From positions 1 to 64,000 of the IMG/VR virus record IMGVR_UViG_3300007513_000004: a stretch of DNA of 64,000 nt; one strand, written 5' to 3'. The notes under the pieces are model-generated. The model was given only the letters and a program-made list of their open reading frames with translations, was not told the DNA's origin and ran no database searches. Positions within the stretch are counted from its first letter, which is position 1. Each line of letters opens with the position of its first letter. The position numbers were made by a program, and so were the translations under genes. Of this stretch, positions 25,081 to 52,708 are shown piece by piece.

Positions 25081-25521
25081 TTATTCATCTTCTGGAATGT
25101 AATCTAATTCTCCTTCAAACATTTCTTCTTCATCTCTATCTCTCTCATCTCTATCTTCATCCTTAATGAATGTGAAATTCATTTGGTAATTGGAATCATC
25201 CGAGTTATGAAACGGATCATACAAAGAATATTCTATTTTATTATCTGTATACATTGAAGTATCCCATTGACTTTGATACTCGGGTAATCCACCCATGTCT
25301 GTGGGACTTACATTCGCAGTATCAAATGTAAATTCAAATGTATTGTTAGAATCTTCTACAACAAAAGGATGAGTTGGTTCATTGAGACTAAGAAAACTTT
25401 TCACAGTATCAACATCAACATCGAAATAAATTTCTTTATCTGTTAATGCATTATACAAGTTGTATGAATCTTCTTCCATTTTATAAATGTAGAAGTTTAA
25501 TGTTTTATTTGTTCCTGCCAT
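25081..25521 (-). CDS. hypothetical acidic protein
   Basis: ORF with GGAG SD. Confidence 0.7.
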   Translation of the reverse strand: MAGTNKTLNFYIYKMEEDSYNLYNALTDKEIYFDVDVDTVKSFLSLNEPTHPFVVEDSNNTFEFTFDTANVSPTDMGGLPEYQSQWDTSMYTDNKIEYSLYDPFHNSDDSNYQMNFTFIKDEDRDERDRDEEEMFEGELDYIPEDE

Positions 25522-25855
25522 TTTGGTACTCCGATGTTTGTTAAGACTTATCTTTCAAATTGATTTAAAGCTAAATACATTTTACTTAGCCGGGTTGGAA
25601 TAGTCTGGAAATAAAAACTAAAATTATGTCAAGACTATTCTGTTCCAATTATAGATAAAAATAATAATATAAAATCTTGGTTGAATATCAAATTGATAAA
25701 CATTCTATTTGTCTGCCCCACTTATTGTCCGTTACAAACTGAGGACATACCGCTCCACATTGGAATAGTCGGTGCCAAACTTCTGTTAAATAATATCTTA
25801 ACAAATTTTGCTGGGTAGGATGGTAAGATAAACGATGGCCGGTTAGAATAGTATG

Positions 25856-26170
25856 TTAAACTTTTGCCCGAAGGATCGGCTCGTAACTCTCAGTCATGAA
25901 GTCTGCACCAAACATTTTCTCCCAACCTAGGTATCTCGTTTTATCGGAAAAGAAAATATCTAAACTATAATGATATTCATCATTAGTTCTGTCTTCTTTA
26001 ATTATCTTATCAGTATTTAATTCAACTTCCTTCATCCCAAAGTATCTGGCTTCAACGAAATAAACATAGTAATAGTTACCATTGCTCTTTTCAAATAAAG
26101 AAATATGGCCCAGCAAATCGCCTCCGCCTCCTGGAGATAAATTTACCATCGTTCTGTCGATAAGTTTCAT
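25856..26170 (-). CDS. hypothetical protein
   Basis: ORF; stop codon lies within a box (ends RAKV*). Confidence 0.65.
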   Translation of the reverse strand: MKLIDRTMVNLSPGGGGDLLGHISLFEKSNGNYYYVYFVEARYFGMKEVELNTDKIIKEDRTNDEYHYSLDIFFSDKTRYLGWEKMFGADFMTESYEPILRAKV

Positions 26171-26417
26171 AACAGAAGTTATGATATTATTAATAGGATG
26201 TTAAGTTTTTGCCCAGGATATTTCATAGCAGTTAAAGCTGGTCTCGAAATCGAGATCCAAGTTTAATTATCATTAGATGGGCATTTAGCGAGCCTTAAAG
26301 TCGCAGCTCCAGAGCTCATGAAGTTTTAAAGACTATTAGATAAGTATCTAATAAAGATTAAAATAAGGAGGCAGCCTGCCGGCACAACTTTAAGGCTCTA
26401 TACATCTGGATGTATTT

Positions 26418-26446
26418 TTCATTTTTAATTTTGCATCGACTACTTC
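26418..26446 (+). promoter_or_regulatory. CATC-type promoter (paralogue 1)
   Basis: TTCATT-TTTAATTTTGCATCGAC-TACTTC. Confidence 0.75.
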
Positions 26447-26499
26447 ATTTCGTAGGGCACAATGTCCTGCACCAACCAATGAGAAAAGGAAAAGATAAA

Positions 26500-27003
26500 A
26501 TGAGCGACAAGACTGCAATTTTTGAGAATGATAACACTGAGTCTCCTCTCCAGGTGATTCGTCAGACTATGAGCGTTTCGCTGTCCGATGGCGGCGCGGC
26601 CCAGGTTTCTTTTGCCACTAATCGTGGTAAGGGTTCCGGTGCCCAGGTTCTTGCTGTCGATGACTTTGCCGAGGTTGTGAGTACTCTCCAGGGTTACTCT
26701 GATGCTGGTATCGAAGAGCGTGAGGAAGAGCAGCTTTCTCCTGCTGATACGATTCGTCGTACCATCCGTATTGAGGATGGTGTGGTCAGCTTCCGTACCC
26801 GTTCGGGTAAGGGCGCGAAGCCTGCTAAGATTCCTGCGAGTCAGTTCGCGGAAGTCTGCGAGCTTCTGTCTGGTACTCTGTCTGCGGTGGAGGCTGCTGG
26901 TCAGTCTCTTTCTCCGGCTGATGAGACTGCTGATGAAGCAGCCGAAGAGCCTGCTATGGACGGAGACTACTCCGACTATGAGGACATGGGTGACGACGAG
27001 TAA
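26500..27003 (+). CDS. tandem-repeat protein, paralogue 1 of 3
   Basis: two internal repeats (SFATNRGKGSG / SFRTRSGKGAK); AGGA SD. Confidence 0.85.
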   Translation: MSDKTAIFENDNTESPLQVIRQTMSVSLSDGGAAQVSFATNRGKGSGAQVLAVDDFAEVVSTLQGYSDAGIEEREEEQLSPADTIRRTIRIEDGVVSFRTRSGKGAKPAKIPASQFAEVCELLSGTLSAVEAAGQSLSPADETADEAAEEPAMDGDYSDYEDMGDDE

Positions 27004-27024
27004 TTAATACTCTGAAACGAAAAA

Positions 27025-27052
27025 GCCCACCCGGTTTAACTTCCGGGTGGGC
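27025..27052. terminator. intrinsic terminator between convergent genes
   Basis: 10-bp stem GCCCACCCGG/CCGGGTGGGC with an A-tract on the left. Confidence 0.8.
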
Positions 27053-27182
27053 ACTCGTTTAATCTATATGTCAAACTTTTGCACGAGGATATGTTGTGCC
27101 GTCGTCTGCCTTATTCCAATTACCGCCTTCTCTTCTGGCTAATTGTGCTGGAGTTAACCTGTGTTCAGGAATGTCTTTTTCT

Positions 27183-27452
27183 CTATCTGCCCAACTGCGA
27201 GAAGACCCCACCGGTTTGTCCCAATCGAGAAAAAGACATTCCATCACCGATAGGTCCTGGAGCAGTTTCTTCAACCTCGCCCTCAGCCCCTACAAGCCAA
27301 CCAGGACCTTCGGCCCCTTCTACTGGGTTTCCATCAATATCTAATGGAATTCCTCCAGCAAATTTAAAAATTACTTTATCAATAACATCAGCTTCTTTCA
27401 CAAGGCCTCTGCTATCTAGTTCGCTGGCTAATTTAATTAATTCTACAATCAT
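27183..27452 (-). CDS. shared-leader family protein (possibly frame-disrupted)
   Basis: MIVELIKLASELDSRGLVKEADVIDKVIFKFAG. Confidence 0.75.
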   Translation of the reverse strand: MIVELIKLASELDSRGLVKEADVIDKVIFKFAGGIPLDIDGNPVEGAEGPGWLVGAEGEVEETAPGPIGDGMSFSRLGQTGGVFSQLGR

Positions 27453-27571
27453 TATAGTCTCACGATATTAATTAAAATAATTAATAGAACTTTAAAGCTC
27501 TCGATAAAACTCTCTATAGAACAAAATTTCTTTGATTAATCTTTTAAAATTACTGGTAGAAATCTTTTTCA

Positions 27572-27754
27572 TCAATCGACTTCTTTACCAAGAGTTAACT
27601 TAACTAATTGAGCTGCATTTTGCTTCAAAGTTCTAAGACCCTTTCTGGCCCTGGTTCCTGCCGCAGCATTACCAGCAGCATTCTTTGAAACATCAGTTTC
27701 TAAACTTGCAACCAACTCTTTAATCTCTTCCCATTTACTTTCTACTGTAGCCAT
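27572..27754 (-). CDS. histone H1-like (Hc1 family) small basic protein
   Basis: GNAAAGTRARK motif; GGAGG SD. Confidence 0.75.
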   Translation of the reverse strand: MATVESKWEEIKELVASLETDVSKNAAGNAAAGTRARKGLRTLKQNAAQLVKLTLGKEVD

Positions 27755-27806
27755 AACTACCTCCTTTGTTTTTTATTATACTATTTGTCAAACTTTTGCC
27801 CAAGGG

Positions 27807-28241
27807 CTACCTGTGGCCCCAGTAAGATTGCGAAGCCTGATTTGGCTCAATAATCCTTACTGTAGTTTGATCATGCCAACATTGACATTCTTCATCATAC
27901 TCTGGGCCGGAGATTTTCTTAATCAAAATCCCATCATCCCTTACTCCTAAAGAGAAATAGTGAGTGGCATTAAACCCAACCTCAAACCATTCCACGGCAT
28001 CGCCACTGAAAGGATCTTTATAAGAATAAGGCCCTGTGGGATCGGAAGAGCAAGAGATAAGCCACTCCTTAATATTGTCGGGACAAAGATTTAGAGCCGC
28101 CTCGGTAGCCGCCCTTCTTTCTGCCCTATATTCCCGATCTCGCTGCTTTGCTGCAATCTCATCTCTGTCGAAATGCCAATCGGGAATCGATGCGAGATCA
28201 TCAATCATGGTTATCTTCCTGTTCTTCCGTAAAGGTTTCAA
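27807..28241 (-). CDS. hypothetical protein
   Basis: ORF ending immediately before a box; start uncertain. Confidence 0.65.
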   Translation of the reverse strand: MKPLRKNRKITMIDDLASIPDWHFDRDEIAAKQRDREYRAERRAATEAALNLCPDNIKEWLISCSSDPTGPYSYKDPFSGDAVEWFEVGFNATHYFSLGVRDDGILIKKISGPEYDEECQCWHDQTTVRIIEPNQASQSYWGHR

Positions 28242-28464
28242 TATTTTCTACAGTTGTGTAAAAGCCTTCCTCGTCATCAATCTGATAACTCATAGAAACA
28301 GCTTTAGATTGATTATGATATCTAACGGCATAATCAATATGCCCCCACTCTGGGAGGTTGGTTATAAAATTATGACCACTATAAAATCTTTCGCCCCAGG
28401 GGACGCCACCACGTTCAATTACAAACATTATTCCATAACCTCCGCGTCGTAAACTTTGATCCAT
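28201..28464 (-). CDS. hypothetical protein
   Basis: ORF; start uncertain. Confidence 0.55.
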   Translation of the reverse strand: MDQSLRRGGYGIMFVIERGGVPWGERFYSGHNFITNLPEWGHIDYAVRYHNQSKAVSMSYQIDDEEGFYTTVENIETFTEEQEDNHD

Positions 28465-28682
28465 TGTTTTTGCTTTTGCGAAAAAGCAAGCGATTGACGA
28501 GAAATATGATTAATTAATTCTTCCCGCTTTTGTGCCTGCGAGCGTCGGATAGGCTCTTCCATCATTAATTCAAAACGAGCCTTGGCTACGCCATAATCCT
28601 TTCCGCTTGACCACCCCATAATATTTCCTGCCAAGTATGCCAAAATTCCAACACAACTAATGACAATTATTTCTGCAATCAT
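28428..28682 (-). CDS. small membrane-anchored protein
   Basis: N-terminal TM; GGAGG SD. Confidence 0.65.
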   Translation of the reverse strand: MIAEIIVISCVGILAYLAGNIMGWSSGKDYGVAKARFELMMEEPIRRSQAQKREELINHISRQSLAFSQKQKQWIKVYDAEVME

Positions 28683-28855
28683 TATTCGGCCCTCCGATAA
28701 TTATTAAAACAATATCCTGCCAAAACTGTGCATAACAATGCAAAGCCCCAGCTGTGGGCAGTAAACGCTTGCCATGCAAATACAGTATTTAGAATTGCGC
28801 AAAACAAGCTGACTCTTCGAGAACTTAAAAAATCCATAGTATTCTCCTATATGTA

Positions 28856-28932
28856 TGGCACGCCCGATAGGATTCGAACCTATGACCCTCGGCTTAGAAG
28901 GCCGATGCTCTATCCAACTGAGCTACGGGCGC
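28856..28932 (-). tRNA. tRNA-Arg(TCT)
   Basis: cloverleaf, loop CT-TCT-AA, CCA end. Confidence 0.96.
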
Positions 28933-28936
28933 TCAA

Positions 28937-29125
28937 TTAAAATTGATGCTCGCCTTCATCTGAATCAACAATCACTCCGCCGTCTCTTAAGGCGATGATT
29001 AAAGTAAGCATAGTATTTTCAATAAAGGTAAGTCTTTCATCAAACGAAGTAACCTGTTCAACCATTAATCTGCATTGGTTCGTAAGCCTCTGCACTTGCT
29101 CTTCCCATAAATCTCTAGTATCCAT
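28937..29125 (-). CDS. small coiled-coil hypothetical protein
   Basis: ORF. Confidence 0.65.
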   Translation of the reverse strand: MDTRDLWEEQVQRLTNQCRLMVEQVTSFDERLTFIENTMLTLIIALRDGGVIVDSDEGEHQF

Positions 29126-29349
29126 TATTCTGACTCTATATCTTTTGGTGCTGTTAACATTATAACACCTAGAAAGTCTAAAATGTCATCCAGCATGGCT
29201 ATTTTTTCTTTCACGCCTTCTTGGTCGCTAGAAAATTCTAAGTCTCTTATAAAAGATAGCAACGCATTATATTGCGCTTCAACTTCTGCGGAATCTTTGA
29301 AAACCTTAATTTGGCTCTTCAACGACTCTATCGTCAGAACTATCTCCAT
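29125..29349 (-). CDS. hypothetical protein
   Basis: ORF, TAATG coupling. Confidence 0.65.
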   Translation of the reverse strand: MEIVLTIESLKSQIKVFKDSAEVEAQYNALLSFIRDLEFSSDQEGVKEKIAMLDDILDFLGVIMLTAPKDIESE

Positions 29350-29857
29350 TACCCTCTTCTTTTATAATTTTCTGAAGTTGACCCATCAGAGCTTCTCCCC
29401 AAGCATCTTCTGTTTCTTGGGACGCCTGATAGTCTTCACTATAATACTCATCTTCTGTAATATAACCTGCATGACGTATAACTTCTCCATCCGGAGGTGA
29501 TAAATAGGTATCACAATCCATGTGCAAGTGCGCGGTCCAACGGTCCTTGGGCAGCGTCATACTCCCAGAGAGGGGAACCAACTCTCGGCATCCTTCCTCT
29601 TTTACAAAGAAGAATTCATCTTCTTGCAAGCCAACACTATCTGCGCCATGCAAGTCCTTGTGCCAACTCGGCTCATAATAAACCTGATGAATCTTGCCGG
29701 GAAAAGCCGTAGGTCCATCATAAAAATATGATGCAACAGTTGGCATAGCCTCCCACCACTCTTTCAGTTCTTCGGCAGACATTTCGGGAATCCAAACCCA
29801 ATGTCTATATCCGTATTCTTCTTCAAGAAGGACGACAATTTCTTCGGCCAAGCTCAT
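29306..29857 (-). CDS. hypothetical acidic protein
   Basis: ORF with GAGGTG SD. Confidence 0.75.
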   Translation of the reverse strand: MSLAEEIVVLLEEEYGYRHWVWIPEMSAEELKEWWEAMPTVASYFYDGPTAFPGKIHQVYYEPSWHKDLHGADSVGLQEDEFFFVKEEGCRELVPLSGSMTLPKDRWTAHLHMDCDTYLSPPDGEVIRHAGYITEDEYYSEDYQASQETEDAWGEALMGQLQKIIKEEGNGDSSDDRVVEEPN

Positions 29858-29874
29858 TCCACACCTCAGTTTTG

Positions 29875-30078
29875 TTACTTGATAACTGATGATAAAACAG
29901 TATTAATTTTTTCTTGAAGATCATAGTTAAGTTTGATCTCAAGAATATTATTAATTTTCTTGCCTGCCTTTTCCAGCAAGCCCTTGGGTGTCTGCACACC
30001 CGCGCATGTGTTACAAGGGTCAACCTCGCCACATAACTCACAGGCTCCTTGGCCTGGATATACCGTTGTTCTATTCAT
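29875..30078 (-). CDS. small Cys-containing protein
   Basis: CELCG...CNTC; AGGAGG SD. Confidence 0.65.
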   Translation of the reverse strand: MNRTTVYPGQGACELCGEVDPCNTCAGVQTPKGLLEKAGKKINNILEIKLNYDLQEKINTVLSSVIK

Positions 30079-30259
30079 TGTCCTTCCTATTAACTATCAA
30101 TTCTAATGCGTGCGCGCACGGGTTCTCTGTCATCATCCTGCACGGTACTCGTTATCCTTTCCATGCTATTGGCAATAGAAAAGAGGGGAAAACTTAAAGC
30201 CATTACCCCAAGGCAGGCTACTATATAAAAAAGAAACTCCATGTAAAACTCCATAATGT

Positions 30260-31387
30260 TTATTCATAATCCCTGACGGCAATTCCGACAGGGAATCTTG
30301 GACGACCATCGTCCGTTAACTCTTGATACCTGACTGTCAAGTATTTTCCAATATAATCATCTAAATTTTTATAGATTACTGCGCGTTCTTCATGACTTCC
30401 GCGTGGACGCACACTAAACTCAAGTCCATCGGAAGTGGTACAGCGATATACGACAAGACCAGCTTCCCGACCGGAACCGTCCTCTCCACCAATAATCTTA
30501 AACTCATCATCAACAAATCTCTTTACCTTTTGCAAATCATATGAACGATGCTTGTACTTGTACGCACTCGCTTGGTTGCGCACCATCATGCCCTCATAGC
30601 CTTGCTGAACAAACATGCTTTCATACATATCAAACTCTGCTTGGTCAACAACATCATATGTTGATATGATTTTAATATTCTTTCCAATGATGGTCCACCC
30701 CTGACAATAATGTGGAAACATTGTTGAGCCAACTCCTTTTTGCGGCAACCTACACTCAAATGCGAGAGAAGGGTGTGGGGAATCATAGATATGATATTCA
30801 AGCAAATCTGTATCATCCCTCTTCTTCTTGACGGCAGCAATGATTCTTTGGAACGTCCACCCATGCACGTACAACTCTCCATCCGTGCATTGCCCGTTCG
30901 CGAGCATGGCACAAAGCTGTGCATTAATCTTATCGGGGATATCAATAACCTTTCCCTTGCGCGACCACATAGTTACAACACCATCGTCTTTGCGTGCGAG
31001 CATACGCACTCCATCCAGCTTAGGCTGAACAAGACAGGGAAAGTTAATCTTCGCGCTATGCTTGTCATACCTGTGCGCGAGCATAGGTAGGAACAATCCT
31101 TCTGACGTAGTAGGAATCTTATCCTTATCCTCTACATATCCTGAATCCTTTTTACGGCTATGTGCAGATTGAGCTTCAGAACATGCCTGTTCGTAGACAG
31201 AGGTTTCGTTTGCTCTACCGAGATTCTTGCCCTCTCCAACATAGCGTTGGTCAAGTTGTTTCTTGCCGTCCTCATAGCCATGTTCAGTTTCGATGTAACA
31301 GGAGCCGTCACCCATCTTGAGAACCGAGATATTCCACTCTTTAATCTTTCCATTGGTGGACTTTCCATATAGTGTAGGTAGATTCAT
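30260..31387 (-). CDS. ATP-dependent DNA ligase with N-terminal WGR-like domain
   Basis: motif I QPKLDGVR, DGELY, GYEGMMVR, LQKVK, OB-fold YLTVRYQELT..G.PRFPV. Confidence 0.93.
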   Translation of the reverse strand: MNLPTLYGKSTNGKIKEWNISVLKMGDGSCYIETEHGYEDGKKQLDQRYVGEGKNLGRANETSVYEQACSEAQSAHSRKKDSGYVEDKDKIPTTSEGLFLPMLAHRYDKHSAKINFPCLVQPKLDGVRMLARKDDGVVTMWSRKGKVIDIPDKINAQLCAMLANGQCTDGELYVHGWTFQRIIAAVKKKRDDTDLLEYHIYDSPHPSLAFECRLPQKGVGSTMFPHYCQGWTIIGKNIKIISTYDVVDQAEFDMYESMFVQQGYEGMMVRNQASAYKYKHRSYDLQKVKRFVDDEFKIIGGEDGSGREAGLVVYRCTTSDGLEFSVRPRGSHEERAVIYKNLDDYIGKYLTVRYQELTDDGRPRFPVGIAVRDYE

Positions 31388-31396
31388 AATATTTCC

Positions 31397-44988: not shown

Positions 44989-44993
44989 AACAA

Positions 44994-45010: not shown

Positions 45011-45049
45011 GCCTTTCTTTATCTTAAATGTCAAACTTTTGCCCGAGGG

Positions 45050-46395: not shown

Positions 46396-46679
46396 CTTGG
46401 AAAGCCTTTCTTAAATCAAAACTGCGCGAGCGGTCCATCAGTAATCAGACAGTATATATTTCTGTCTTTGTAGCATTCTTCGCCGGGTGGGTCGTGGGAT
46501 AGGCATTTTAATGCCAATAATAAAAACTAAATTATTTACGTCCCCGCCAGCCAATCGTGGGACTGCTCCTTCCAAATTACGAACGCGAATTATAAAATCC
46601 TTTAGCGCAAACCGCCGGGCAAAAAGTTGACATTTATAATAAAAAGAGGCTGCCGAGGCAGCCTCGATATTTAGGCAAT

Positions 46680-47129
46680 TTAGCAACCGTATCGGCGCTC
46701 CATCGCAACCTCCGCTTCGTATTCGGCCTCCCACCGTGCTCGTTCTTCCAAGTCCTGTAGAACCTTCCGATTATTATCGGAGAGCCTATCCTCGTCAACG
46801 ACTGGCGAAACTCGCTTGCCGCCACATTCGTAGCAGGTCACGTCATAGCTTCCAGAAAAATAGTCCCGCTCGAAATCCGGGTCATCATAGAAGTCATCGG
46901 AGGTCAATCCGTTGCAATCGATGGAAGGATTGACGTGGGAGCCTCGACCGGAGCAGGTGGCGCACACCTCAAACTTTACGGGCAGCAGCTCAAAGAATTC
47001 CTCGCCATCCTCATCCTCAATGGCGACTTGAACCATCATCTGGCTCTCGTCAAAGGAATTATACCAAGTGCCACGGCGGGCCGCTCGGGTGCGGGGGTCG
47101 TTGTAATAGTTGTAATCATCGATGGACAT
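46680..47129 (-). CDS. phage protein with DnaJ-like CxxCxGxG motifs
   Basis: CATCSGRG, CYECGG; promoter 47152-47180. Confidence 0.8.
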   Translation of the reverse strand: MSIDDYNYYNDPRTRAARRGTWYNSFDESQMMVQVAIEDEDGEEFFELLPVKFEVCATCSGRGSHVNPSIDCNGLTSDDFYDDPDFERDYFSGSYDVTCYECGGKRVSPVVDEDRLSDNNRKVLQDLEERARWEAEYEAEVAMERRYGC

Positions 47130-47222
47130 TAGACACTCCTCTGTGTATGGATGAGTAAACGATGGAAAAACAAAGTTGAAATAAGCATGTGCAAATCTTT
47201 TGCCCAGAGTAATATTTATCTT

Positions 47223-47363
47223 ATGAAGTGGTTAGATGACATAAAACAGAAACTATGGTGGAGAGGAATTACTGGCAAGGATCTTGCAGTACTTACGCTC
47301 ATGCCCGTATCTTTCGTAGCAATTATATTGTTTTTAATTTGGGGGCTGGCGCAAGGTATGTAA
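47223..47363 (+). CDS. small membrane protein
   Basis: TM ORF between two boxes. Confidence 0.5.
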   Translation: MKWLDDIKQKLWWRGITGKDLAVLTLMPVSFVAIILFLIWGLAQGM

Positions 47364-47378
47364 ATATTTTGCCCGGCG

Positions 47379-47582
47379 TTATAATAAATAAACAAGGCTG
47401 GCGACTAAAACAACACCAGCAGAGAATATTGCCATTGGAACATAGGCTCCAGCGGTGAACGAAAGTGTTGCGCCCGCAGCAGATATCATAAAGGCAAAGT
47501 ACATAACTATAGCTATCAACTCCCCAATATGTTCTGGAACGCCCATTGCCCAGCTTCTATATTTTGCAATTAAGTTATTCAT
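47379..47582 (-). CDS. small two-TM membrane protein
   Basis: hydrophobic ORF between boxes. Confidence 0.65.
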   Translation of the reverse strand: MNNLIAKYRSWAMGVPEHIGELIAIVMYFAFMISAAGATLSFTAGAYVPMAIFSAGVVLVASLVYLL

Positions 47583-47641
47583 TTAACGATGATACTCCGG
47601 GCAAAAAATTGACACAAAGGTTGAACCAAAAGGCTCTCAGT

Positions 47642-47857
47642 CTAAAAGTCATCCCGAGAAACCTTCTTGCGGCAAGCCTTCTTGCTCTGCTCCTTACGAG
47701 CATCACCGTGAGAGCCGGAACCGTTCCGAAGAATCAGTCCAAGCATATCAAGGTTGCGAGTCTTACGTCGCTTACCCTCTCCGCGCATGGTGGCGCGAAG
47801 TTCCCGCTCCTCACGGCGGGCATTACGCTTGCGGTTCTTTCGTGCTGTCTTGGCCAT
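47642..47857 (-). CDS. small Arg/Lys-rich protein
   Basis: GGAGG SD; promoter 47877-47905. Confidence 0.75.
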   Translation of the reverse strand: MAKTARKNRKRNARREERELRATMRGEGKRRKTRNLDMLGLILRNGSGSHGDARKEQSKKACRKKVSRDDF

Positions 47858-47933
47858 GATAGCCTCCTTCTGTCTCTATGTAACCGATGGAGAAATAGAA
47901 ATCAAAAATGTGTTGTAAAACTTTTGCCCAGGC

Positions 47934-48368
47934 TCACCGTCTAATTTTTACATTAGGTATGTCAGCAATCCGGTCAGCCAGTAAATCTCGACCATCAGGA
48001 CAAGAGCGATTCAACATAGTCAGTATAGACTGAATCTCAACCCAAAGCTGTTCTGGGAGCACAAGACAGGAGTATCCAAGATAAACCTTGACCCAATCCT
48101 CTCCCAAGCTACGAAAGGCGCAATCGGATGCAGCGTAAAGATGCTCCGGCTTTACCGAGAAGATTGCGCCCTTTACTGTAAATTCGATGGGTTCCGTATC
48201 AGTAAAGGCAAAGCCACCAGGGTCGAGGTGGGCAACATCAATAGCGGTTTTTTCCTCTGGAGTAACACTATATCGTTCAGCTATGTCATCCTCACACACG
48301 CTCGTACCAACGAGTGAAATGTGCAAACGAATTTTGGAATCTGCGGGGTAACGGATTGACTCAAGCAT
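47934..48368 (-). CDS. hypothetical protein
   Basis: GGAGG SD; promoter 48384-48412. Confidence 0.75.
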   Translation of the reverse strand: MLESIRYPADSKIRLHISLVGTSVCEDDIAERYSVTPEEKTAIDVAHLDPGGFAFTDTEPIEFTVKGAIFSVKPEHLYAASDCAFRSLGEDWVKVYLGYSCLVLPEQLWVEIQSILTMLNRSCPDGRDLLADRIADIPNVKIRR

Positions 48369-48515
48369 ACTTCCTCCTGTGTGTATGTATGTGATGATAA
48401 AATAATACTGGAAAAGTCTGGGGAAAAGATTGACATACGTGTGAATGTTTTGCCCAAATGGGAGTGGGCCCGGTGGAATTACCCCAATTCCACCGGGCGG
48501 CGTGTGCCCATCACC

Positions 48516-48986
48516 TCACACGCCCTCTCGCTCCCAAGGGGGACGCGGGTTACCATTTCTCCAATCATGCTCCCAACGCTCACGCATGTTAGAGATACCC
48601 GTAGCATCAACCCCGTGCTGATTGCGAGTTGCCAACTCCTCATCTGTGCAGCCTCCATCATAAAGAGAGACTACCGAAACCTCGTATCCATGTTCCTCTG
48701 CCATACGCAAGTACGGCTCCATTTCCCATCGCTGGGTAAAAGTATTGTGAACCACCACGGTCGCTGCCAGTCGATTCCTCATGGAATTTTCGGCCTGCTC
48801 CTGACACCAAAAGTGTGCAGCGGGCAGCTTTCGAGGGTTAAAATTGTAAATTCCATCCTCATCAAGAAAGAAATCATCAGCGGCAAAGAAGCACTTGCCA
48901 AGCGGTGCGCCTACGTTCAGTAGCATCCGACCAAGCCTTGTCTTTCCTGAACCGGAAATTCCGCGAACCAAAATAAGTCTATACAT
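48516..48986 (-). CDS. P-loop kinase/NTPase (AAA_33, N4BP2-like)
   Basis: LVRGISGSGKT, AADDFF, AHFWCQ, VVHNTFT..WE..PY. Confidence 0.88.
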   Translation of the reverse strand: MYRLILVRGISGSGKTRLGRMLLNVGAPLGKCFFAADDFFLDEDGIYNFNPRKLPAAHFWCQEQAENSMRNRLAATVVVHNTFTQRWEMEPYLRMAEEHGYEVSVVSLYDGGCTDEELATRNQHGVDATGISNMRERWEHDWRNGNPRPPWEREGV

Positions 48987-49067
48987 GCGTGTCCTCGTTG
49001 GGCAAAAAATTGTCATACTTCTCCCTTGGAGGCCCCCGGCACAATGCCGGGGAACCTCGGGAGGCGG

Positions 49068-49511
49068 CTACTTCTTGACGGCTGCTCCATCAAACTTGAC
49101 GTAGCCTTTGGTAGCAATCCGGGGAAGGTTATCGACAATCTCCGAATCAAACATATCGAGCATCGTCCGATACTTGACCTGCTCATCGGCGGTCAACGAG
49201 CTAACCCGCTTCTCCATCGCAGCTTTGGTCAGACCGGAAAGCCGATTCCAAAGTTCGATAATGTGGTCCGGCGCATACTCTCGCGTGCATCCAAGCTCTT
49301 GAAGGAGCATACAGATAGTCGGAACCGACCGTGCGCGGTTTGTGCCTGCGCGTGTACTGGATGGTCCTCGGGAGAGGACACCTTCCACCTCGGCGGTGAA
49401 CTTGACATGCACATCCGACTCGGGTACAAGCACGGATTCGTCGTTGCAGGATTGAAGGTTGATAACTTTGGCGAGGGCCAACTGTTCGATGGGCGAAAGG
49501 GTCTGGGACAT
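49068..49511 (-). CDS. hypothetical protein
   Basis: AGGAG SD; promoter 49559-49587. Confidence 0.75.
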   Translation of the reverse strand: MSQTLSPIEQLALAKVINLQSCNDESVLVPESDVHVKFTAEVEGVLSRGPSSTRAGTNRARSVPTICMLLQELGCTREYAPDHIIELWNRLSGLTKAAMEKRVSSLTADEQVKYRTMLDMFDSEIVDNLPRIATKGYVKFDGAAVKK

Positions 49512-49640
49512 TGATTGTCTCTCCTAAAGAGGGTGGGTTTGTCTCCCTCTTACATCATAATGTAGCCGATGATAAAACAGAATCGAAAAATGAAATGTTA
49601 AAGTTTTGCCCAGCGGTCTGCAATAATCATGCCAAAAAGT

Positions 49641-49674
49641 TGGCACAGTTCTTGCATTAGCAAGAAGCATGCCA
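49641..49674. promoter_or_regulatory. head-to-head pair of sigma54 consensus sites
   Basis: TGGCAC-AGTTC-TTGCA (+), TGGCAT-GCTTC-TTGCT (-). Confidence 0.7.
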
Positions 49675-49752
49675 GTTAATTAAGTTAAAGTTTTGCCCGA
49701 TTAAATAAATAATTAACTTAATCTGGGCAAAAAGTTGACATTTAAAACAAAT

Positions 49753-50021
49753 AAAAAGAAGGGGGGCAAAGGCCCCTCTGGGTAGCGCGGCTTGTGTGCA
49801 AAACAGCAGCAGGGGAGCTTGCTCTTTGAGAGGTGTGTGGTTCGCGACCCGAACAAATCTCGTGACATCCCTTGGCTTTTCAGTTTGCCTTGCCTTCCCA
49901 GAGGGGCATAGCTGCTCATTACTTTACCGGGGGTCTATCCTGTACCCCGAACAGTTACACGGTATGAGTCAACCGTGCGGTGTATAACTAGTATTCCACC
50001 GTTTCTGAATCTCTCTCCTTG
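49753..50021 (-). ncRNA. candidate 270-nt structured RNA
   Basis: promoter 50028-50056, multiple stems, terminal hairpin plus U-tract, no credible ORF. Confidence 0.55.
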
Positions 50022-50093
50022 TGTTCTAAAGTAATTGATGCAAAAATCGAAATGAAAAACATATTTGCAAAGTTTTTGCCCATACGTAAGGCT

Positions 50094-50127
50094 TGGCACA
50101 CTTTTTGCTAATGCAAGAAACATGCCA
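50094..50127. promoter_or_regulatory. head-to-head pair of sigma54 consensus sites
   Basis: TGGCAC-ACTTT-TTGCT (+), TGGCAT-GTTTC-TTGCA (-). Confidence 0.7.
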
Positions 50128-50181
50128 ACAAACATGTCAATGTTTTGCCCTTGGGCAAAAGTTTGACACAAAGCATAAAAG

Positions 50182-50205
50182 AAGGCCGGGCATATGCCCG
50201 GCCTT
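50182..50205 (-). terminator. intrinsic terminator of ardC
   Basis: AAGGCCGGGC stem followed by CTTTT on the minus strand. Confidence 0.75.
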
Positions 50206-50234
50206 GCGTATGGCCCCACTCGGGGCGTCTGGCC

Positions 50235-51176
50235 CTACTTGCGCTGGCCCTCCCCCTTGTCGATGAGGTAGCGCATGACCTTGCCCGCTTCATTCGCGGC
50301 CCGCTGAATCACGGTAGGGTCATCCTTGAGAGCCTTCCGCCAGTTGGCAAGGTAGGCCACATGGTTGTCCATCAAACCCTCTCGCTTGACTCCCAGATAG
50401 GCGCATGTGAACGCCGCGCCAATCTCGGCAACCAACTCCTCGTAAGCATACGCCTCCGAGCCGAAGCCCGTGAACTTGACGATGCCATCCCGGTTGAGTC
50501 GGTCCTTTGCACCTGACCAGTGGGCGTGCTCATGGATGGTAGTGGCCCAAAAATCAGCAACAGTGGTGAAGGCTCCGGCCTCGGGCACCATGATGTAGTC
50601 CTCGCGAGGGGAGTAGAAAGCACGCCCGCCGCCCGTGCGGAAATCCGCGTCGATACCTTTGACAAGTGCAGCCGCCGCCTCATGGCCCACCTTTGGGTCA
50701 ACCTCTGAAATCTCGGCAGACGGTAGGGGGTTCGTCGTTTGCTGGTTGTTGAAAGTGTACGAGCTTCCAAATCCGATGAACTTTGTGGACCCCTTGACCA
50801 AGAGACTCGCGCCACAGGGCTTGCACTTTTTTGCAAATCCACATGGGCGGCCACAACTGTTGCAGGCCAGCTTCGGGAAGAAAATAGGAGTCCCCTTCTC
50901 GCCTTTGCGCACGTAGTTGCCGCTCTTTTGCCACTGGCCAAACCCGGCCCAACGGTTGTCACCAAACTGAACCCCGGCCATCATCAGCATAAAGCCATTG
51001 AAGTTTCCGCCGTAGGCGCGGCCCGTCAGGATGTTGATTGGCATCCCACCAGCAAGGGACCTATCCCACGGCATAATCCAAGGGGTGCCGTCCTCGGGCG
51101 GGTTGTCGAGGGCTTCGATAATCTGCGCGGCTATACGCTCGCACGTCTCTTGAATCTTGTCGTTGGGCTTGCTCAT
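50235..51176 (-). CDS. ardC: ArdC-family antirestriction / ssDNA-binding protein with an inserted Zn-ribbon
   Basis: WIMPW, N..TGR.Y.G.N, VRKGEKG, RAFYSP..D.I, HEHAHW, YAYEELVAEIGAAF; promoter 51225-51253. Confidence 0.9.
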   Translation of the reverse strand: MSKPNDKIQETCERIAAQIIEALDNPPEDGTPWIMPWDRSLAGGMPINILTGRAYGGNFNGFMLMMAGVQFGDNRWAGFGQWQKSGNYVRKGEKGTPIFFPKLACNSCGRPCGFAKKCKPCGASLLVKGSTKFIGFGSSYTFNNQQTTNPLPSAEISEVDPKVGHEAAAALVKGIDADFRTGGGRAFYSPREDYIMVPEAGAFTTVADFWATTIHEHAHWSGAKDRLNRDGIVKFTGFGSEAYAYEELVAEIGAAFTCAYLGVKREGLMDNHVAYLANWRKALKDDPTVIQRAANEAGKVMRYLIDKGEGQRK

Positions 51177-51432
51177 GGTGGTCCTCCGGGGACTAAAGCG
51201 GGTATTGACGGGGGCTTACATACATGAGTAACCGATGCTCAAATAGAAATGAAAAAACCAATTGCCAATCTTTTGCCCAGACAGGTGTGCTTCTTTATGC
51301 AAAAACCATGCCAACCCAATTGACAAAGTTTTGCCCAGACTCAGACGCATTTCCTTGCAAGAACCATGCCAATGTGTATGAAAATGTTTTGCCCAAATGT
51401 AAAAACATATTTTACAAAACCTCGACAGAGGT

Positions 51433-51466
51433 TGGCATGGTTCTTGCTAATGCAAGAACTGTGCCA
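51433..51466. promoter_or_regulatory. head-to-head pair of sigma54 consensus sites
   Basis: TGGCAT-GGTTC-TTGCT (+), TGGCAC-AGTTC-TTGCA (-). Confidence 0.7.
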
Positions 51467-51567
51467 TATGTTATGCAAATGTTTTGCCCAATGCTTTGGG
51501 CAAAAAAATGACATGTGTACGAAAATACACACGTCTTTACATTTTCTTTACATCGGACAAAAGAAAA

Positions 51568-51595
51568 CCCCTCACCGCCTTTCGGCGGTGAGGGG
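51568..51595 (-). terminator. intrinsic terminator
   Basis: 12-bp stem CCCCTCACCGCC-GAAA-GGCGGTGAGGGG plus TTTTCTTTT. Confidence 0.88.
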
Positions 51596-51623
51596 GTAGG
51601 AGGTTAGCCCCGCCCCGGCCCTA

Positions 51624-52322
51624 CTATGCGTAGGGGATGGGGAGGGGGGAGGAGGCGTCAAACTCGACCCAATCGGCGTCCAGCCACATGTCGGCGGGGA
51701 CGTGCCGCCACTCGATGCGAACTCGGCGGTAGCGGCCAGCGTAGGCACCGGAGCCGAAGGGACGGAGCCAGCACACGGGCTTGCCTTTCGGGGTGGTCAG
51801 GTCCTGACCCTCGGCCCAGACCTTGCTGGCATCGGCGCGGCGCATCATCAGCACCCCGTCAATCTCGGTCAGGAGGCAGACGTAAACCGGGACACCAGCA
51901 TCGACGGCGGCAAGGAAGGCGGCCAGCGGGGTTCCGGCCTTGGCACAGTCGGCCTCAGCATCCCAGACGCCGCTGGTCAGGTCGCGATTCCCGTAGGGGT
52001 CGCCGGTGCTTCCCTTGAAGTTGACCGGGACCATTTCGACAATCGCCGGGTAGGGGTGGCCCGCGAGCGACGGGTGAACCACGGGCCACACGTCATCAAA
52101 GAGGCCCAGACCCCGGCCACGCTGCAAGGGGCGGCCCAATCGGTCCAGGTCGCCATTCTGCGCGACACCATCCCGGCACGGAGGGACCGCGACACCAGCC
52201 GCTTCCATCCAATATGCGACGTGCTTGTACCCGTCGCCCACTCCGGCACCCATTCCGCCCGCTTCCGCGAGGCGGCAGCCGCCCTCAATCTCAAGTCCGT
52301 TTCTGTCGTTCTTCTTAGTCAT
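51624..52322 (-). CDS. hypothetical protein, very GC-rich
   Basis: GGAGG SD; promoter 52339-52367; terminator downstream. Confidence 0.8.
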   Translation of the reverse strand: MTKKNDRNGLEIEGGCRLAEAGGMGAGVGDGYKHVAYWMEAAGVAVPPCRDGVAQNGDLDRLGRPLQRGRGLGLFDDVWPVVHPSLAGHPYPAIVEMVPVNFKGSTGDPYGNRDLTSGVWDAEADCAKAGTPLAAFLAAVDAGVPVYVCLLTEIDGVLMMRRADASKVWAEGQDLTTPKGKPVCWLRPFGSGAYAGRYRRVRIEWRHVPADMWLDADWVEFDASSPLPIPYA

Positions 52323-52395
52323 AGTGACCTCCTACACATAGGTAAGTGATGCTCAAACAGAAATGAAAAACTATTGCCCAAACAAAACGAAAGGT

Positions 52396-52430
52396 TGGCA
52401 CGCGTCTTGCTATATGCACAAAGCATGCCA
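52396..52430. promoter_or_regulatory. head-to-head pair of sigma54-like sites (one mismatch)
   Basis: TGGCAC-GCGTC-TTGCT (+), TGGCAT-GCTTT-GTGCA (-). Confidence 0.6.
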
Positions 52431-52708
52431 ACTTATATGCTTATATATTTTTGACATTTGCCAGCGCATGTTGGCACGGCGCGTGCCACCGCCTACGACG
52501 CATTTCCTGCTCAGGGTATATTTTATTTTGTTTTCTATACCCTATAAAAGAAAAAACCAGCGGTTTGCTGGTTCTTGTATAAGGACTATATAAGGTAGAT
52601 TATATAGTTTATGTTCTTAGGGGATTATTTAAATTACTTATAGGGTTATTGTTATTGGGAACTTACTGTTCTCTCATACTCTAATCAAAAACAATCCGCT
52701 TTTTATTA

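What the first reader, a model, noticed from the sequence alone, without database searches (positions are those of the whole stretch)
25081..52700. A 27-kb early block bounded by non-coding DNA with a GC gradient peaking at its right edge: candidate terminal repeat / first-injected DNA
Seen: boxes, most CATC promoters and all sigma54 pairs are confined here. GC rises from AT-rich at 25 kb to roughly two-thirds (by eye) at 51.6-52.3 kb, then drops abruptly at about 52.5 kb. Most genes point away from that edge, and ArdC is the second gene from it. Known: SPO1 and T5 place host-takeover genes with strong promoters in terminal repeats or first-step DNA. Inference: the physical genome end lies near 52.5 kb.
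Basis: partly seen in the sequence, partly recalled or inferred. Interest (0 to 1): 0.6.

Follow-up and report, generated by a model that had tools for sequence, protein, structure and literature searches.

The report
GC-rich early gene cassette array
A marine giant phage carries a conserved row of about 20 self-contained small genes (including the anti-restriction gene ArdC) whose codons get steadily more GC-rich and less dependent on the phage's own tRNAs toward one sharp edge; this looks like a phage counterpart of the codon-adapted 'leading region' of plasmids, but nothing available shows that the edge is a physical genome end or that the block is a terminal repeat.

Summary
In the 223-kb viral record, 34 of 37 boxes, 24 of 25 CATC promoter-like elements and 15 of 18 sigma54-like sites lie at 25.8-52.5 kb. 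GC climbs from 33% to 67-69% in the last gene, then falls to about 30% at 52.5-52.9 kb. ArdC is the second gene from that edge.

The block has two parts. 25-34.3 kb is ordinary phage backbone. 34.3-52.4 kb is an array of promoter-gene-terminator cassettes.

The GC signal sits in third codon positions: GC3 is 0.41-0.79 in the array against 0.31 in the backbone, while spacers stay at 35-50% GC. It is a step, a plateau and an edge peak.

Four further lineages show the same sharp junction and GC peak. Synonymous sites between orthologs are saturated yet stay GC-rich. Two paralogs in one relative have GC3 0.77 at the edge and 0.52 mid-array. Edge genes avoid the codons read by the phage's own tRNAs.

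Best reading: a conserved early anti-defence cassette array with selected, host-like codon use.

The 27-kb terminal repeat is not supported: contig depth shows no two-fold step, and all assemblies cross the junction. A physical end near 52.5 kb remains untested, because no raw reads exist.

The parts
24374..25080 (.). Left non-coding gap (707 nt). It holds a hairpin plus T-run terminator after gene 25081-25521, CAGAAAAAAGGT-type units iterated at about 24-nt spacing (24.85-24.92 kb), and TGCGTGTGTG three times (24.57-24.64 kb).
   Evidence: The iterated motifs occur nowhere else in the record. Function is unknown; it may be an origin or another cis-acting site.
25081..34300 (-). Left sub-block. 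Mostly tightly packed minus-strand genes with backbone-like codon use (GC3 0.22-0.46, mean 0.36). It includes the ATP-dependent DNA ligase (30260-31387), a DUF1281_C protein (31895-32482) and tRNA-Arg(tct) (28856-28932).
   Evidence: Only four boxes and one CATC element lie here, all at 25.8-27.8 kb.
26410..27003 (+). Outlier cassette: a CATC element at 26415 (+) drives a gene that is a 62%-identical paralog of array gene 37888-38328.
34301..52400 (-). The cassette array proper. About 21 called small genes (15 on the minus strand, 6 on the plus strand), most with their own box plus CATC module and a strong SD. GC is 48.5% and gene GC3 is 0.41-0.79; 18 of 21 genes exceed 0.45, the backbone maximum.
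   Evidence: A codon-usage gene caller trained on the phage's own long genes fails here.
52337..52370 (-). Example CATC element, consensus on the gene strand TTTTTCATTTCTrTTTTATCATCrnyTACaT. Start coordinates of the other copies: 26415+, 34410+, 35658+, 37509-, 38383-, 38450-, 38514+, 38871+, 40712-, 41725-, 42634-, 43360-, 43987-, 44047+, 44632+, 46006-, 46065+, 47150-, 47875-, 48382-, 49557-, 50026-, 51223-. One copy lies outside the block at 18498-.
   Evidence: Homologous modules in other sequence dialects precede the array genes of relatives.
45030..45049 (-). Example box, GGGCAAAAGTTTGACA on the gene strand. There are 34 copies in 25.8-51.5 kb, usually 5-8 nt upstream of a CATC element. 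Some are inverted, and some are paired as palindromes (for example 51498-51524 with 51478).
51433..51466 (.). Sigma54-like face-to-face palindrome, TGGCA-N6-TTGC-TAAT-GCAA-N6-TGCCA. Other pairs start at 41796, 49641 and 50094. Single units lie at 34344, 39404, 47273, 49620, 51299, 51357 and 52396/52415.
   Evidence: The motif is also frequent in relatives L020 and L024 but absent from L032.
51624..52322 (-). Edge gene (232 aa), 66.7% GC, GC3 0.79. It belongs to a metagenome-only family and has a PD-(D/E)xK nuclease-like predicted fold.
   Evidence: pLDDT 87.9; Z 6.2 to DpnI, 6.0 to NhoI; most of the top 30 rows are nucleases of this fold. No Pfam or PHROG match.
50235..51176 (-). ArdC anti-restriction homolog (313 aa), GC3 0.72.
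   Evidence: ArdcN E = 3.5e-20 and MPTase-PolyVal E = 9.6e-38. The HExxH motif is visible in the query peptide TIHEHAHW.
49068..49511 (-). 147-aa cassette gene of unknown function, GC3 0.64. It is the third high-GC3 edge gene.
48516..49016 (-). AAA_33 kinase-like protein.
45303..45992 (-). Calcineurin-like metallophosphoesterase.
44455..44629 (+). tRNA-Lys(ttt) and tRNA-Leu(taa), downstream of the CATC element at 44047 and gene 44189-44446.
41133..41708 (-). SprT-like zinc metallopeptidase.
36048..36728 (-). GP88-family protein.
51568..51595 (-). Intrinsic terminator after the edge gene (12-bp stem plus T-run). Similar terminators lie at 50182-50205 (after ArdC), 46646-46665 and 44994-45010 (bidirectional).
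52323..52708 (-). Right gap and junction. It holds the terminator of backbone gene 52709-53116 (52552-52576), an AT-rich stretch (28-34% GC), a sigma54-like unit and the first box plus CATC module.
   Evidence: The same backbone-to-array junction is found in L020, L024, L034 and L038-40.

Best explanation
The core of the block (34.3-52.4 kb) is a conserved, recombination-prone array of autonomous gene cassettes. Each cassette is an A-tract box, a promoter-like CATC module, a strong SD, a small gene and often a terminator. The array stands at the head of the phage's almost unidirectional gene map.

Inferred: its genes (a nuclease-fold protein, ArdC, SprT, a phosphoesterase, a kinase-like protein and many unknowns) are expressed first and independently of one another, to blunt host defences and take over the cell.

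The GC 'gradient' is not a property of the DNA end. It is a codon-level bias held by selection: the closer a gene lies to the 52.4-kb edge, the more it uses C/G-ending codons and the less it uses the A-ending codons read by the phage's own tRNAs.

Inferred: this lets the first genes be translated quickly on the tRNA pool of a GC-richer host, before phage tRNAs accumulate. That would make the array the phage counterpart of the GC-rich, codon-adapted leading region of conjugative plasmids.

The repeated regulatory modules also act as homology patches through which cassettes are exchanged between related phages. The 25-34.3 kb part is ordinary backbone (ligase operon) with one stray cassette.

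Shown: the anatomy, the motif confinement, the third-position location of the GC signal, its maintenance and position dependence, and conservation in five lineages.

Inferred: early timing, anti-defence roles beyond ArdC, and host-adapted translation as the selective force.
For: 1. Cassette anatomy. The CATC module sits 26-35 nt upstream of SD and ATG in most copies and occurs in both orientations. Strong terminators follow single genes.

2. Confinement. Motifs are confined to the block genome-wide.

3. The GC signal is in codons. Array GC3 is 0.41-0.79 against a backbone of 0.31 +/- 0.05 (maximum 0.45), while spacers stay at 0.35-0.50 even between genes with GC4 of 0.6-0.8.

4. The bias is maintained, not inherited.
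- ArdC, window against L020: third-base identity at four-fold sites is 0.37 (near saturation), yet GC4 is 0.64 and 0.59.
- The 147-aa gene, window against L024: identity 0.23, GC4 0.62 in both.

5. Position dependence inside one genome. Two paralogs in L024 (71-73% amino-acid identity) have GC3 0.77 at the edge and 0.52 mid-array, with equal GC2.

6. The same sharp junction with a GC peak at the edge and an inward decline recurs in four further lineages: L020, L024, the 345-kb TARA scaffold (L032/L034) and L038-40. The TARA scaffold lacks the window's motifs but has its own homologous module before each gene.

7. tRNA independence. Backbone against edge-gene fractions are AGA 0.54/0.02, TTA 0.32/0.00, ATA 0.47/0.03, AAA 0.57/0.18, CCA 0.43/0.10 and ACA 0.43/0.12. 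Mid-array genes are intermediate. The phage encodes tRNAs for just these codons.

8. Cassette exchange. L024/L021 is collinear with 52.3-37.6 kb, but protein identity ranges from 39% to 100% (95-100% at 37.6-39.7 kb beside neighbours at 60-66%), with insertions and moved genes.

9. The only CATC copy outside the block (18498, minus strand) heads the gene train that carries six tRNA genes, a phage sigma factor and the tmRNA.

10. Precedents. Plasmid leading regions are GC-rich and codon-adapted, with anti-restriction genes the most adapted (PMC13478746). PeSL promoter-terminator cassettes mediate shuffling in T4-type phages (PMC2839356, PMC4122927).
Against: - No expression data exist. No listed run is on record as RNA, so 'early' is inferred.
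- The host is unknown, so adaptation to host codons could not be measured. The edge genes' codon pattern (C-ending codons, AAG, GAG) is what any high-GC bias would give.
- The promoter module is not a textbook sigma70 promoter in this dialect: the TTGACA-like hexamer of the box lies about 22 nt from the TAyCAT-like hexamer. The phage encodes two sigma factors. The class could therefore be middle rather than immediate-early.
- Only ArdC has a documented anti-defence role. The ligase, GP88 and other genes are not obviously host-takeover genes.
- Within 34.3-52.4 kb the GC3-position correlation is not significant. The gradient rests on the last three genes plus the comparative data.
Confidence: 0.55

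Rival explanations
1. One reading: the 27-kb block is a long direct terminal repeat of the SPO1 or T5 type. It would be present at both ends of the packaged genome and collapsed in the assembly, with boundaries at about 24.6 and 52.5 kb.
For: - The block is bounded by two real non-coding gaps.
- Its size would be about 8% of an estimated 330-kb genome, the same proportion as in T5 and SPO1 (my own knowledge).
- It holds early-type genes with repeated strong promoter-like modules.
- Assemblies that run through both boundaries are what a collapsed repeat would give.
Against: - Per-contig k-mer depth shows no two-fold step across 52.5 kb. In X5 it is 5.13, 5.42 and 7.78 inside against 5.7 and 4.9 outside. 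In X1 it is 11 against 8.8.
- The block is not one unit. 25-34.3 kb is backbone-like in codon use and motifs, and the array starts at about 34.3 kb.
- In the distant relative L034 the array edge abuts different backbone genes, homologs of window 19.3-20.9 kb.
- The depth evidence is weak, because it comes from contigs and not from reads.
Confidence: 0.05
2. One reading: the packaged DNA has a fixed end, with a short terminal repeat or none, at about 52.4-52.7 kb, and the array is the first DNA to enter the cell. Gene order and the codon gradient would then mirror order of entry, as with T7 ocr, T5 pre-early genes or a plasmid leading region. This is compatible with the best explanation and adds a physical claim to it.
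For: - Nearly all genes run one way from this junction: 185 of 210 are on the minus strand.
- The junction is the sharpest compositional and regulatory boundary in the record and is conserved in five lineages.
- The anti-restriction gene is second from the edge.
- Codon adaptation is strongest at the edge.
- In plasmids the same combination marks the DNA that enters first (PMC11541004, PMC13478746).
Against: - There is no direct evidence of any kind.
- No contig from any sample ends at the junction. Contigs end at 51733, 52622, 52704, 53153 and 53473, and all larger assemblies cross it.
- No terminase was found from which to infer packaging.
- Headful packaging with permuted ends is common in giant phages (my own knowledge).
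- An early region needs no physical end.
Confidence: 0.22
3. The GC-rich array is recently imported foreign DNA, from a plasmid or a GC-rich bacterium, that is still drifting toward phage composition. New genes would enter at the edge, so that position reflects age.
For: - ArdC is typically a plasmid gene (PMC7213743).
- Codon use differs so much from the backbone that a phage-trained gene caller fails.
- The GC of the same gene family is lower mid-array than at the edge.
Against: - The array, its order and its junction are shared by lineages whose orthologs are only 37-79% identical.
- Four-fold sites are saturated between orthologs (identity 0.23-0.37) yet equally GC-rich in both, which drift toward 31% GC3 would have erased.
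- There is no DNA match to any plasmid.
- The edge-gene family is known only from metagenomic, phage-like contigs.
Confidence: 0.04
4. The GC enrichment is a regional mutational or repair bias, not codon selection. One candidate is GC-biased gene conversion driven by the intense recombination among repeated modules, or by a recombinogenic DNA end, and strongest at the edge.
For: - The mosaic identity pattern shows frequent recombination in the array.
- The bias depends on position and not on the gene.
- GC1 is also somewhat raised: 0.68-0.70 at the edge against 0.61 mid-array.
Against: - Spacers within 100 nt of genes with GC4 0.6-0.8 stay at 0.37-0.48 GC, although they are constrained by the regulatory motifs.
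- Third-position C is about twice as frequent as G in four-fold boxes, a strand- and codon-specific pattern that conversion bias alone does not predict.
- The avoided codons are the ones the phage tRNAs read.
Confidence: 0.14

Closest known systems
Hyperplastic regions with PeSL (promoter-early stem-loop) cassettes in T4-type phages (PMC2839356, PMC4122927)
   Same: - Runs of small, mostly unknown early genes.
- Each gene is flanked by a conserved composite promoter or terminator motif.
- Relatives differ by insertion, deletion and replacement of single cassettes and show mosaic identity.
   Different: - The motif sequences are unrelated.
- The module here adds an A-tract box and, in this dialect, sigma54-like palindromes.
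- This is one large array at a conserved junction, not several interspersed regions.
- No position-linked GC3 gradient is reported in the PeSL abstracts I read; I did not read the full texts.
- Whether this phage is T4-related was not tested.
Leading regions of conjugative plasmids (PMC11541004, PMC13478746)
   Same: - Enriched in anti-defence genes, including ArdC-type anti-restriction.
- GC-rich and codon-adapted relative to the rest of the element, with the anti-restriction genes the most adapted.
- Interpreted there as selection for rapid expression on entry.
   Different: - This is a phage with double-stranded DNA, not single-stranded conjugative transfer.
- Entry order is unknown here.
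- The regulatory modules are not the single-strand promoters of plasmids.
- The host, and therefore true codon adaptation, is unknown.
Early regions at genome termini: the SPO1 host-takeover module in its 13-kb terminal repeat, T5 pre-early (first-step-transfer) DNA, and the T7 class I genes beginning with ocr (my own knowledge)
   Same: - A cluster of small early genes with repeated strong promoters.
- An anti-restriction function near the start.
- Genes directed inward from the boundary.
   Different: In those phages the physical end and the repeat are demonstrated. Here a two-fold depth step is not seen, and ends could not be examined.
Morons of lambdoid phages: autonomous promoter-gene-terminator units (my own knowledge)
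   Same: Single genes carry their own promoter and terminator, and their composition differs from that of their neighbours.
   Different: Morons are scattered single insertions expressed from prophages. This is a conserved array of about 20 units sharing one promoter family in a lytic-type giant phage.

Membership tests
Long direct terminal repeat (SPO1 / T5 type) | The repeat is present twice per genome, giving about two-fold sequencing depth over it with sharp steps at its boundaries. | tested here: inconclusive
   Only contig-level k-mer depth is available. In X5 it is 5.13-7.78 inside against 4.9-5.7 outside; in X1 it is 11 against 8.8. There is no two-fold step, but per-contig means are a weak measure.
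Long direct terminal repeat (SPO1 / T5 type) | Fixed molecular ends: read starts pile up at the repeat boundaries. | not testable with these tools
   All 21 runs are held as Logan contigs. The read-laying table of places where molecules begin or end was empty, as it must be for contigs.
Long direct terminal repeat (SPO1 / T5 type) | The repeat behaves as one unit with uniform character between its boundaries. | tested here: not met
   25-34.3 kb is backbone-like (GC3 0.36, few motifs), and 34.3-52.4 kb is the array.
PeSL-type shuffling cassettes / hyperplastic region | A conserved composite regulatory motif is repeated between small genes. | tested here: met
   There are 24 CATC modules and 34 boxes in the block, at a fixed distance from SD and ATG, with terminators after single genes.
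PeSL-type shuffling cassettes / hyperplastic region | Relatives differ by gain, loss or replacement of whole cassettes, with breaks at the motifs. | tested here: met
   Against L024/L021 there are collinear but mosaic identities (39-100%), an inserted 403-aa gene, an extra paralog and a moved SprT/OmpA segment. The exact breakpoints at motifs were not mapped base by base.
PeSL-type shuffling cassettes / hyperplastic region | Membership of the T4 superfamily, and sequence similarity of the motif to PeSL. | not tested
   No T4 core gene was sought specifically. The matches found were tail-fibre and baseplate PHROGs, RNR, PhoH and helicase. The motif was not aligned to PeSL.
ArdC anti-restriction proteins | An N-terminal ArdcN (ssDNA-binding) domain plus a C-terminal zincin metalloprotease domain with HExxH. 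| tested here: met
   PF08401 E = 3.5e-20 over residues 11-102, and PF18818 E = 9.6e-38 over residues 167-295. HEHAH is present in the query peptide TIHEHAHW.
Sigma54-dependent promoters | A -24 GG and a -12 GC element in the TGGCAC-N5-TTGCW geometry. | tested here: met
   There are 15 matches to TGGCA-N6-TTGC in the block against 2.2 expected by length. Four of them are face-to-face palindromes, which is an odd arrangement for promoters.
Sigma54-dependent promoters | A cognate AAA+ enhancer-binding activator and sigma54-dependent transcription. | tested here: inconclusive
   No PF00158 match was found in the record, which is only about 67% complete. A host activator is possible. Transcription cannot be tested with these tools.
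Leading-region-like first-entry module | GC-rich and codon-adapted relative to the rest of the element, with anti-restriction genes the most adapted. | tested here: inconclusive
   The GC3 excess and the avoidance of phage-tRNA codons are shown. Adaptation to host codons cannot be measured because the host is unknown.
Leading-region-like first-entry module | It is the first DNA to enter the recipient cell. | not testable with these tools
   This needs virion-end mapping and time-resolved entry or expression data.

The most novel reading that the evidence does not exclude
The array is the leading end of a phage genome with fixed termini. The DNA would enter edge-first, and selection for the fastest possible expression on host tRNAs alone would have produced a standing codon gradient that mirrors order of entry and expression. 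The gradient runs from the nuclease-fold gene through ArdC and the rest of the array to the tRNA and sigma-factor train. It would be a phage equivalent of the plasmid leading region, conserved across at least five lineages of marine giant phages even though their promoter sequences have diverged. The structured gap at 24.4-25.1 kb, about 28 kb from the edge, could then be an entry-pause or replication site.
Probability: 0.2. Interest if true: 0.8.

Novelty: new variant of a known kind. Interest (0 to 1): 0.6.

Why it matters
If the reading holds, composition alone can locate the first-expressed anti-defence genes in uncultured phages. A sharp step to high GC3, with avoidance of the phage's own tRNA codons, would mark them. 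About 15 of the array genes have no known function, and the conserved nuclease-fold edge protein sits ahead of ArdC, so the array is a ready list of candidate counter-defence genes.

It would also extend a principle just described for conjugative plasmids (codon-adapted, GC-rich leading regions) to phages. And it gives a clean natural experiment on selection at synonymous sites: two paralogs in one genome whose GC3 differs by 0.25 according to position.

For the original claim, the practical message is that a compositional and regulatory boundary, however sharp, does not locate a physical genome end.

Tried and rejected
- **Read-level test of ends and depth.** It was impossible: all 21 runs are Logan contigs, and the single read-laying run (49601-55600) gave only contig placement and per-contig depth.
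- **Read laying 'joints'.** Those at 49700->52342 and 51466->52342 have only 23-27 nt on one side and fall inside repeated modules. A loose end at 52368 matches the module at 43.4 kb. I treat them as cross-alignments, not as proof of deletions.
- **DNA similarity.** Searches against cultured phages and plasmids found nothing beyond a tRNA.
- **Cultured relatives.** A protein search with a conserved kinase found only Thermus phages at about 35% identity.
- **ArdC in the viral collection.** A single-protein search found nothing.
- **Sigma54 palindrome scan of viral contigs.** It found one unrelated contig.
- **The one metagenome scan.** It used the edge module and returned only a contig I already held.
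- **Packaging and polymerase genes.** Terminase_6N, a sigma54 activator and a T7-type RNA polymerase were not found in the record; the T7-type search also found nothing in its control genomes, so it is uninformative. PHROG scans of 20 large proteins and Pfam scans of four found no capsid, portal or terminase, so no packaging inference is possible.
- **Chi-like octamers.** They show no enrichment or orientation bias near the edge, so I dropped that idea.
- **Second promoter class.** K-mer enrichment upstream of backbone genes found only AT-rich words.
- **Rfam.** It found only the tRNAs in the block.
- **Box hexamer as a sigma70 -35 element.** It fits the L034 dialect (TTCACA-17-TACACT) but not the window, where the spacing is about 22 nt. 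The promoter assignment stays open.
- **Edge protein fold.** Foldseek against PDB found no significant match.

Full report
**Setting.** The window is the first 64 kb of a 223,402-bp viral record classed as linear and about 67% complete. Its overall GC is 39.3%. It is a novel marine giant phage. DNA searches against cultured phages and plasmids found nothing beyond a tRNA. Twenty public runs from 12 studies of marine samples hold parts of the region. Of about 210 called genes, 185 are on the minus strand. All nine tRNA genes and a tmRNA lie in the window.

**Checking the observation.** Every element of it is real.
- GC rises from 0.33 at 25-26 kb, through 0.40-0.44 (27-34 kb) and 0.44-0.51 (34-50 kb), to 0.55-0.56 at 50-52 kb.
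- At 200-nt resolution, GC is 0.67-0.69 across 51.6-52.3 kb and falls to 0.28-0.34 by 52.5-52.9 kb.
- Nine of the ten GC-richest 1-kb windows of the whole record lie in 34-52 kb (Mann-Whitney p = 3e-11).
- The box GGGCAAAANNTT has 34 of its 37 copies in the block.
- A position weight matrix for the 34-nt CATC element finds 25 copies in the record. Of these, 24 lie in 26.4-52.4 kb, and none appear in shuffled sequence.
- The sigma54-like TGGCA-N6-TTGC has 15 of 18 copies in the block, including all four face-to-face 34-nt palindromes.
- ArdC (ArdcN plus the MPTase-PolyVal protease domain) is the second gene from the edge.
- Both bounding gaps are truly non-coding.

**Four refinements matter.**
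1. The 67-69% GC patch is exactly one gene, 51624-52322.
2. The 'gradient' is a step at about 34.3 kb, then a plateau, then a peak in the last three genes. GC3 against position gives rho 0.79 over the whole block but only 0.34 (not significant) inside the array.
3. The signal is in codon third positions. Array genes have GC3 of 0.41-0.79, against a backbone of 0.31 +/- 0.05 (maximum 0.45). Spacers stay at 0.35-0.50.
4. Genes pointing away from the edge is a genome-wide habit, not a local one.

**Anatomy.** The block has two parts.
- *25-34.3 kb* is ordinary backbone. Its genes are tightly packed and have the phage's usual codon use. They include an ATP-dependent DNA ligase and tRNA-Arg.
- Within that stretch, one stray cassette at 26.4-27.0 kb is a paralog of an array gene.
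- *34.3-52.4 kb* is an array of autonomous cassettes. Read on the gene strand, a typical unit runs as follows: the box GGGCAAAAGnTTTrCA, then 5-8 nt, then TTTTTsATTTCTrTTTTATCATCrGTTACAT. About 10 nt further on come a strong GGAGG-type SD and the start codon.
- Units occur in both orientations.
- Strong hairpin plus T-run terminators follow individual genes, for example after the edge gene and after ArdC.
- Recognisable products are ArdC, an AAA_33 kinase-like protein, a metallophosphoesterase, an SprT-like peptidase and a GP88-family protein. The rest have no family.
- The edge gene belongs to a metagenome-only family of about 34 members.
- A confident model of the edge protein (pLDDT 87.9) has no significant Foldseek match. 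Its best structural neighbours are almost all PD-(D/E)xK nucleases, at modest Z: DpnI 6.2 and NhoI 6.0.

**Is it a terminal repeat or a physical end?** The decisive test (read depth and read starts) could not be run, because every run is held only as contigs. What the contigs show is this.
- In X5, from a study independent of the probable source, a 1,562-nt contig spans 51592-53153 with one mismatch.
- In X5, contigs wholly inside the block have k-mer depths of 5.13-7.78, and contigs wholly outside have 4.9-5.7.
- In X1 the figures are 11 inside and 8.8 outside. There is no two-fold step. This is weak evidence, because it is one mean figure per contig.
- A second IMG/VR contig is 100% identical over 51733-64959. 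It crosses the proposed end and stops inside the GC-rich gene.
- Contigs from four further lineages all cross the equivalent junction.
- No contig ends at the junction.

Continuity does not exclude a collapsed repeat or a short terminal redundancy. The end therefore remains untested, and the long repeat is unsupported. No terminase was found in this partial record.

**Comparative evidence.** This turned out to be the most informative part.
- *L020* (a 63.6-kb contig) has backbone genes at 34-44% GC. These are followed by the edge-gene homolog (58% GC) and ArdC (56%), with boxes and sigma54-like sites starting exactly at the junction.
- *L024/L021* is collinear with the window from 52.3 to 37.6 kb. 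Protein identities swing between 39% and 100% from cassette to cassette, and genes have been inserted and moved. This is the signature of repeated cassette-level recombination.
- L024/L021 carries two paralogs of the edge gene. The copy at the edge has GC3 0.77 and the copy 11 kb inward has 0.52. GC2 is the same in both.
- *A 345-kb TARA scaffold (L032/L034)* has backbone at GC3 0.33-0.39. An array then begins at 65% GC and declines to about 40% over 20 kb.
- L032, sampled from that scaffold, lacks the window's motifs entirely. Each array gene is instead preceded by its own homologous module, GGGGAGAAAAGATTCACA-TTTCTAATCTTTAyCnC-TAyACT-ATTATATAATGTAACC. This reads as a good sigma70-type promoter.
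- *A still more distant lineage (L038-40)* has an edge protein only 37% identical. It jumps from 30-44% to 68% GC exactly at that gene, with ArdC 4 kb further in.

The junction, the edge gene, ArdC and the GC peak are therefore an old, conserved architecture.

**Why the GC is high.**
- At four-fold sites under conserved residues, ArdC of the window and L020 share the third base at only 37% of sites. The 147-aa gene of the window and L024 shares it at 23%. Both values are at or near saturation.
- Yet GC4 is 0.59-0.64 and 0.62 in both members of each pair.
- A recent import drifting toward 31% GC3 would have lost this signal. The bias is therefore a maintained equilibrium, and the paralog pair shows that it depends on position.
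- A regional mutation or conversion bias is disfavoured. Spacers next to genes with GC4 0.6-0.8 stay at 0.37-0.48 GC, and third-position C outnumbers G about two to one. It cannot be excluded, because the spacers are constrained by the motifs.
- The codons that the backbone uses heavily, and for which the phage carries tRNAs, almost vanish from the three edge genes and are intermediate mid-array. Backbone fractions are AGA 0.54, TTA 0.32, ATA 0.47, AAA 0.57, CCA 0.43 and ACA 0.43. Edge-gene fractions are 0.02, 0.00, 0.03, 0.18, 0.10 and 0.12.

The simplest reading is selection for translation on host tRNAs alone, strongest for the genes needed first. The same combination was reported in 2026 for plasmid leading regions: GC-rich, codon-adapted, with anti-restriction genes the most adapted (PMC13478746; also PMC11541004, and PMC7213743 for ArdC).

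**Timing.** 'Early' is inferred, not shown.
- In favour: the gene content, the single-gene units with short leaders, the tRNA independence, and the location of the only CATC copy outside the block. That copy (18498, minus strand) heads the train carrying tRNAs, a phage sigma factor (3893-4750; regions 2 and 4) and the tmRNA.
- Against: in this dialect the module is not a canonical sigma70 promoter, and the phage has two sigma factors. A middle class therefore cannot be excluded.
- A crude search for a second promoter class in the backbone found nothing clear.

**Comparison with known systems.**
- In function and evolution the array most resembles the hyperplastic early regions of T4-type phages, whose PeSL promoter-terminator cassettes mediate modular shuffling (PMC2839356, PMC4122927).
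- In composition and content it resembles plasmid leading regions.
- It differs from both in being a single conserved array at a fixed junction with a position-linked, selection-maintained GC3 gradient.
- It cannot be filed as an SPO1- or T5-type terminal repeat. The depth test gives no two-fold step, the block is not uniform, and the ends could not be examined.

**Verdict.**
- The terminal repeat is unsupported.
- The physical end is open.
- The conserved codon gradient is the interesting result, and it is directly testable.

Noticed in passing
window 53081-53796, 55.9, 57.9, 59.5, 59.9, 60.4, 60.9 and 61.7 kb; also 23.4 and 27.4 kb; G000 72.0 and 95.6 kb: At least 12 genes share a conserved N-terminal stretch of about 30-50 residues (M-I-x-E-L-I-K-L-A..L-D..G-L-x-K-E-A-D) followed by unrelated C-termini. 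The family has no Pfam match. It flanks the array edge in relatives L020, L024 and L038 as well. It may be a targeting or leader peptide family, for example for virion-packaged proteins.
   Followed up: partly
window 24374-25080: A 707-nt non-coding gap holds iterated CAGAAAAAAGGT-type units at about 24-nt spacing and three TGCGTGTGTG units. Neither occurs elsewhere in the record. It is a candidate replication origin or other cis-acting site.
   Followed up: partly
window 41796-41829, 49641-49674, 50094-50127, 51433-51466, plus single units; L019 4941-4974 and 5448-5480: Sigma54-type -24/-12 units are arranged face to face as 34-nt palindromes. They are abundant in close relatives (L020, L024) and absent from L032. 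An unrelated viral contig (L019) has the same kind of palindrome. No activator gene was found in the partial record. Their function is open: promoters, operators or sigma54 traps.
   Followed up: partly
window 3893-4750 (-) and G000 about 129.7-130.3 kb (-): The phage encodes two sigma70-family proteins. The first has regions 2 and 4. This implies phage-directed promoter switching.
   Followed up: partly
window 35658 (+), 37509 (-), 42634 (-), 50026 (-): Four high-scoring CATC modules have no ORF of 30 or more codons downstream. They may drive small RNAs or very small peptides.
   Followed up: no
window 1878-2227 (-) and 10.8-18.2 kb: A one-piece tmRNA (tag ANNNYYYEPVALAA) and a cluster of six tRNA genes lie in the leftward gene train headed by the CATC copy at 18498. 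The tRNAs mostly read A-ending codons that the backbone favours.
   Followed up: partly
window 37.6-39.7 kb compared with L021 14.3-16.5 kb: Five consecutive small proteins are 85-100% identical (four of them 95-100%) to those of a relative whose neighbouring cassettes are only 60-66% identical. This points to a very recent exchange of a 2-kb segment between diverged phages.
   Followed up: partly
L034 9417-10000 (TARA scaffold_59): A tRNA-like sequence, with recognisable acceptor and T-arm parts separated by extra sequence, sits between array cassettes of the distant relative. It may be an intron-containing or degenerate tRNA.
   Followed up: no
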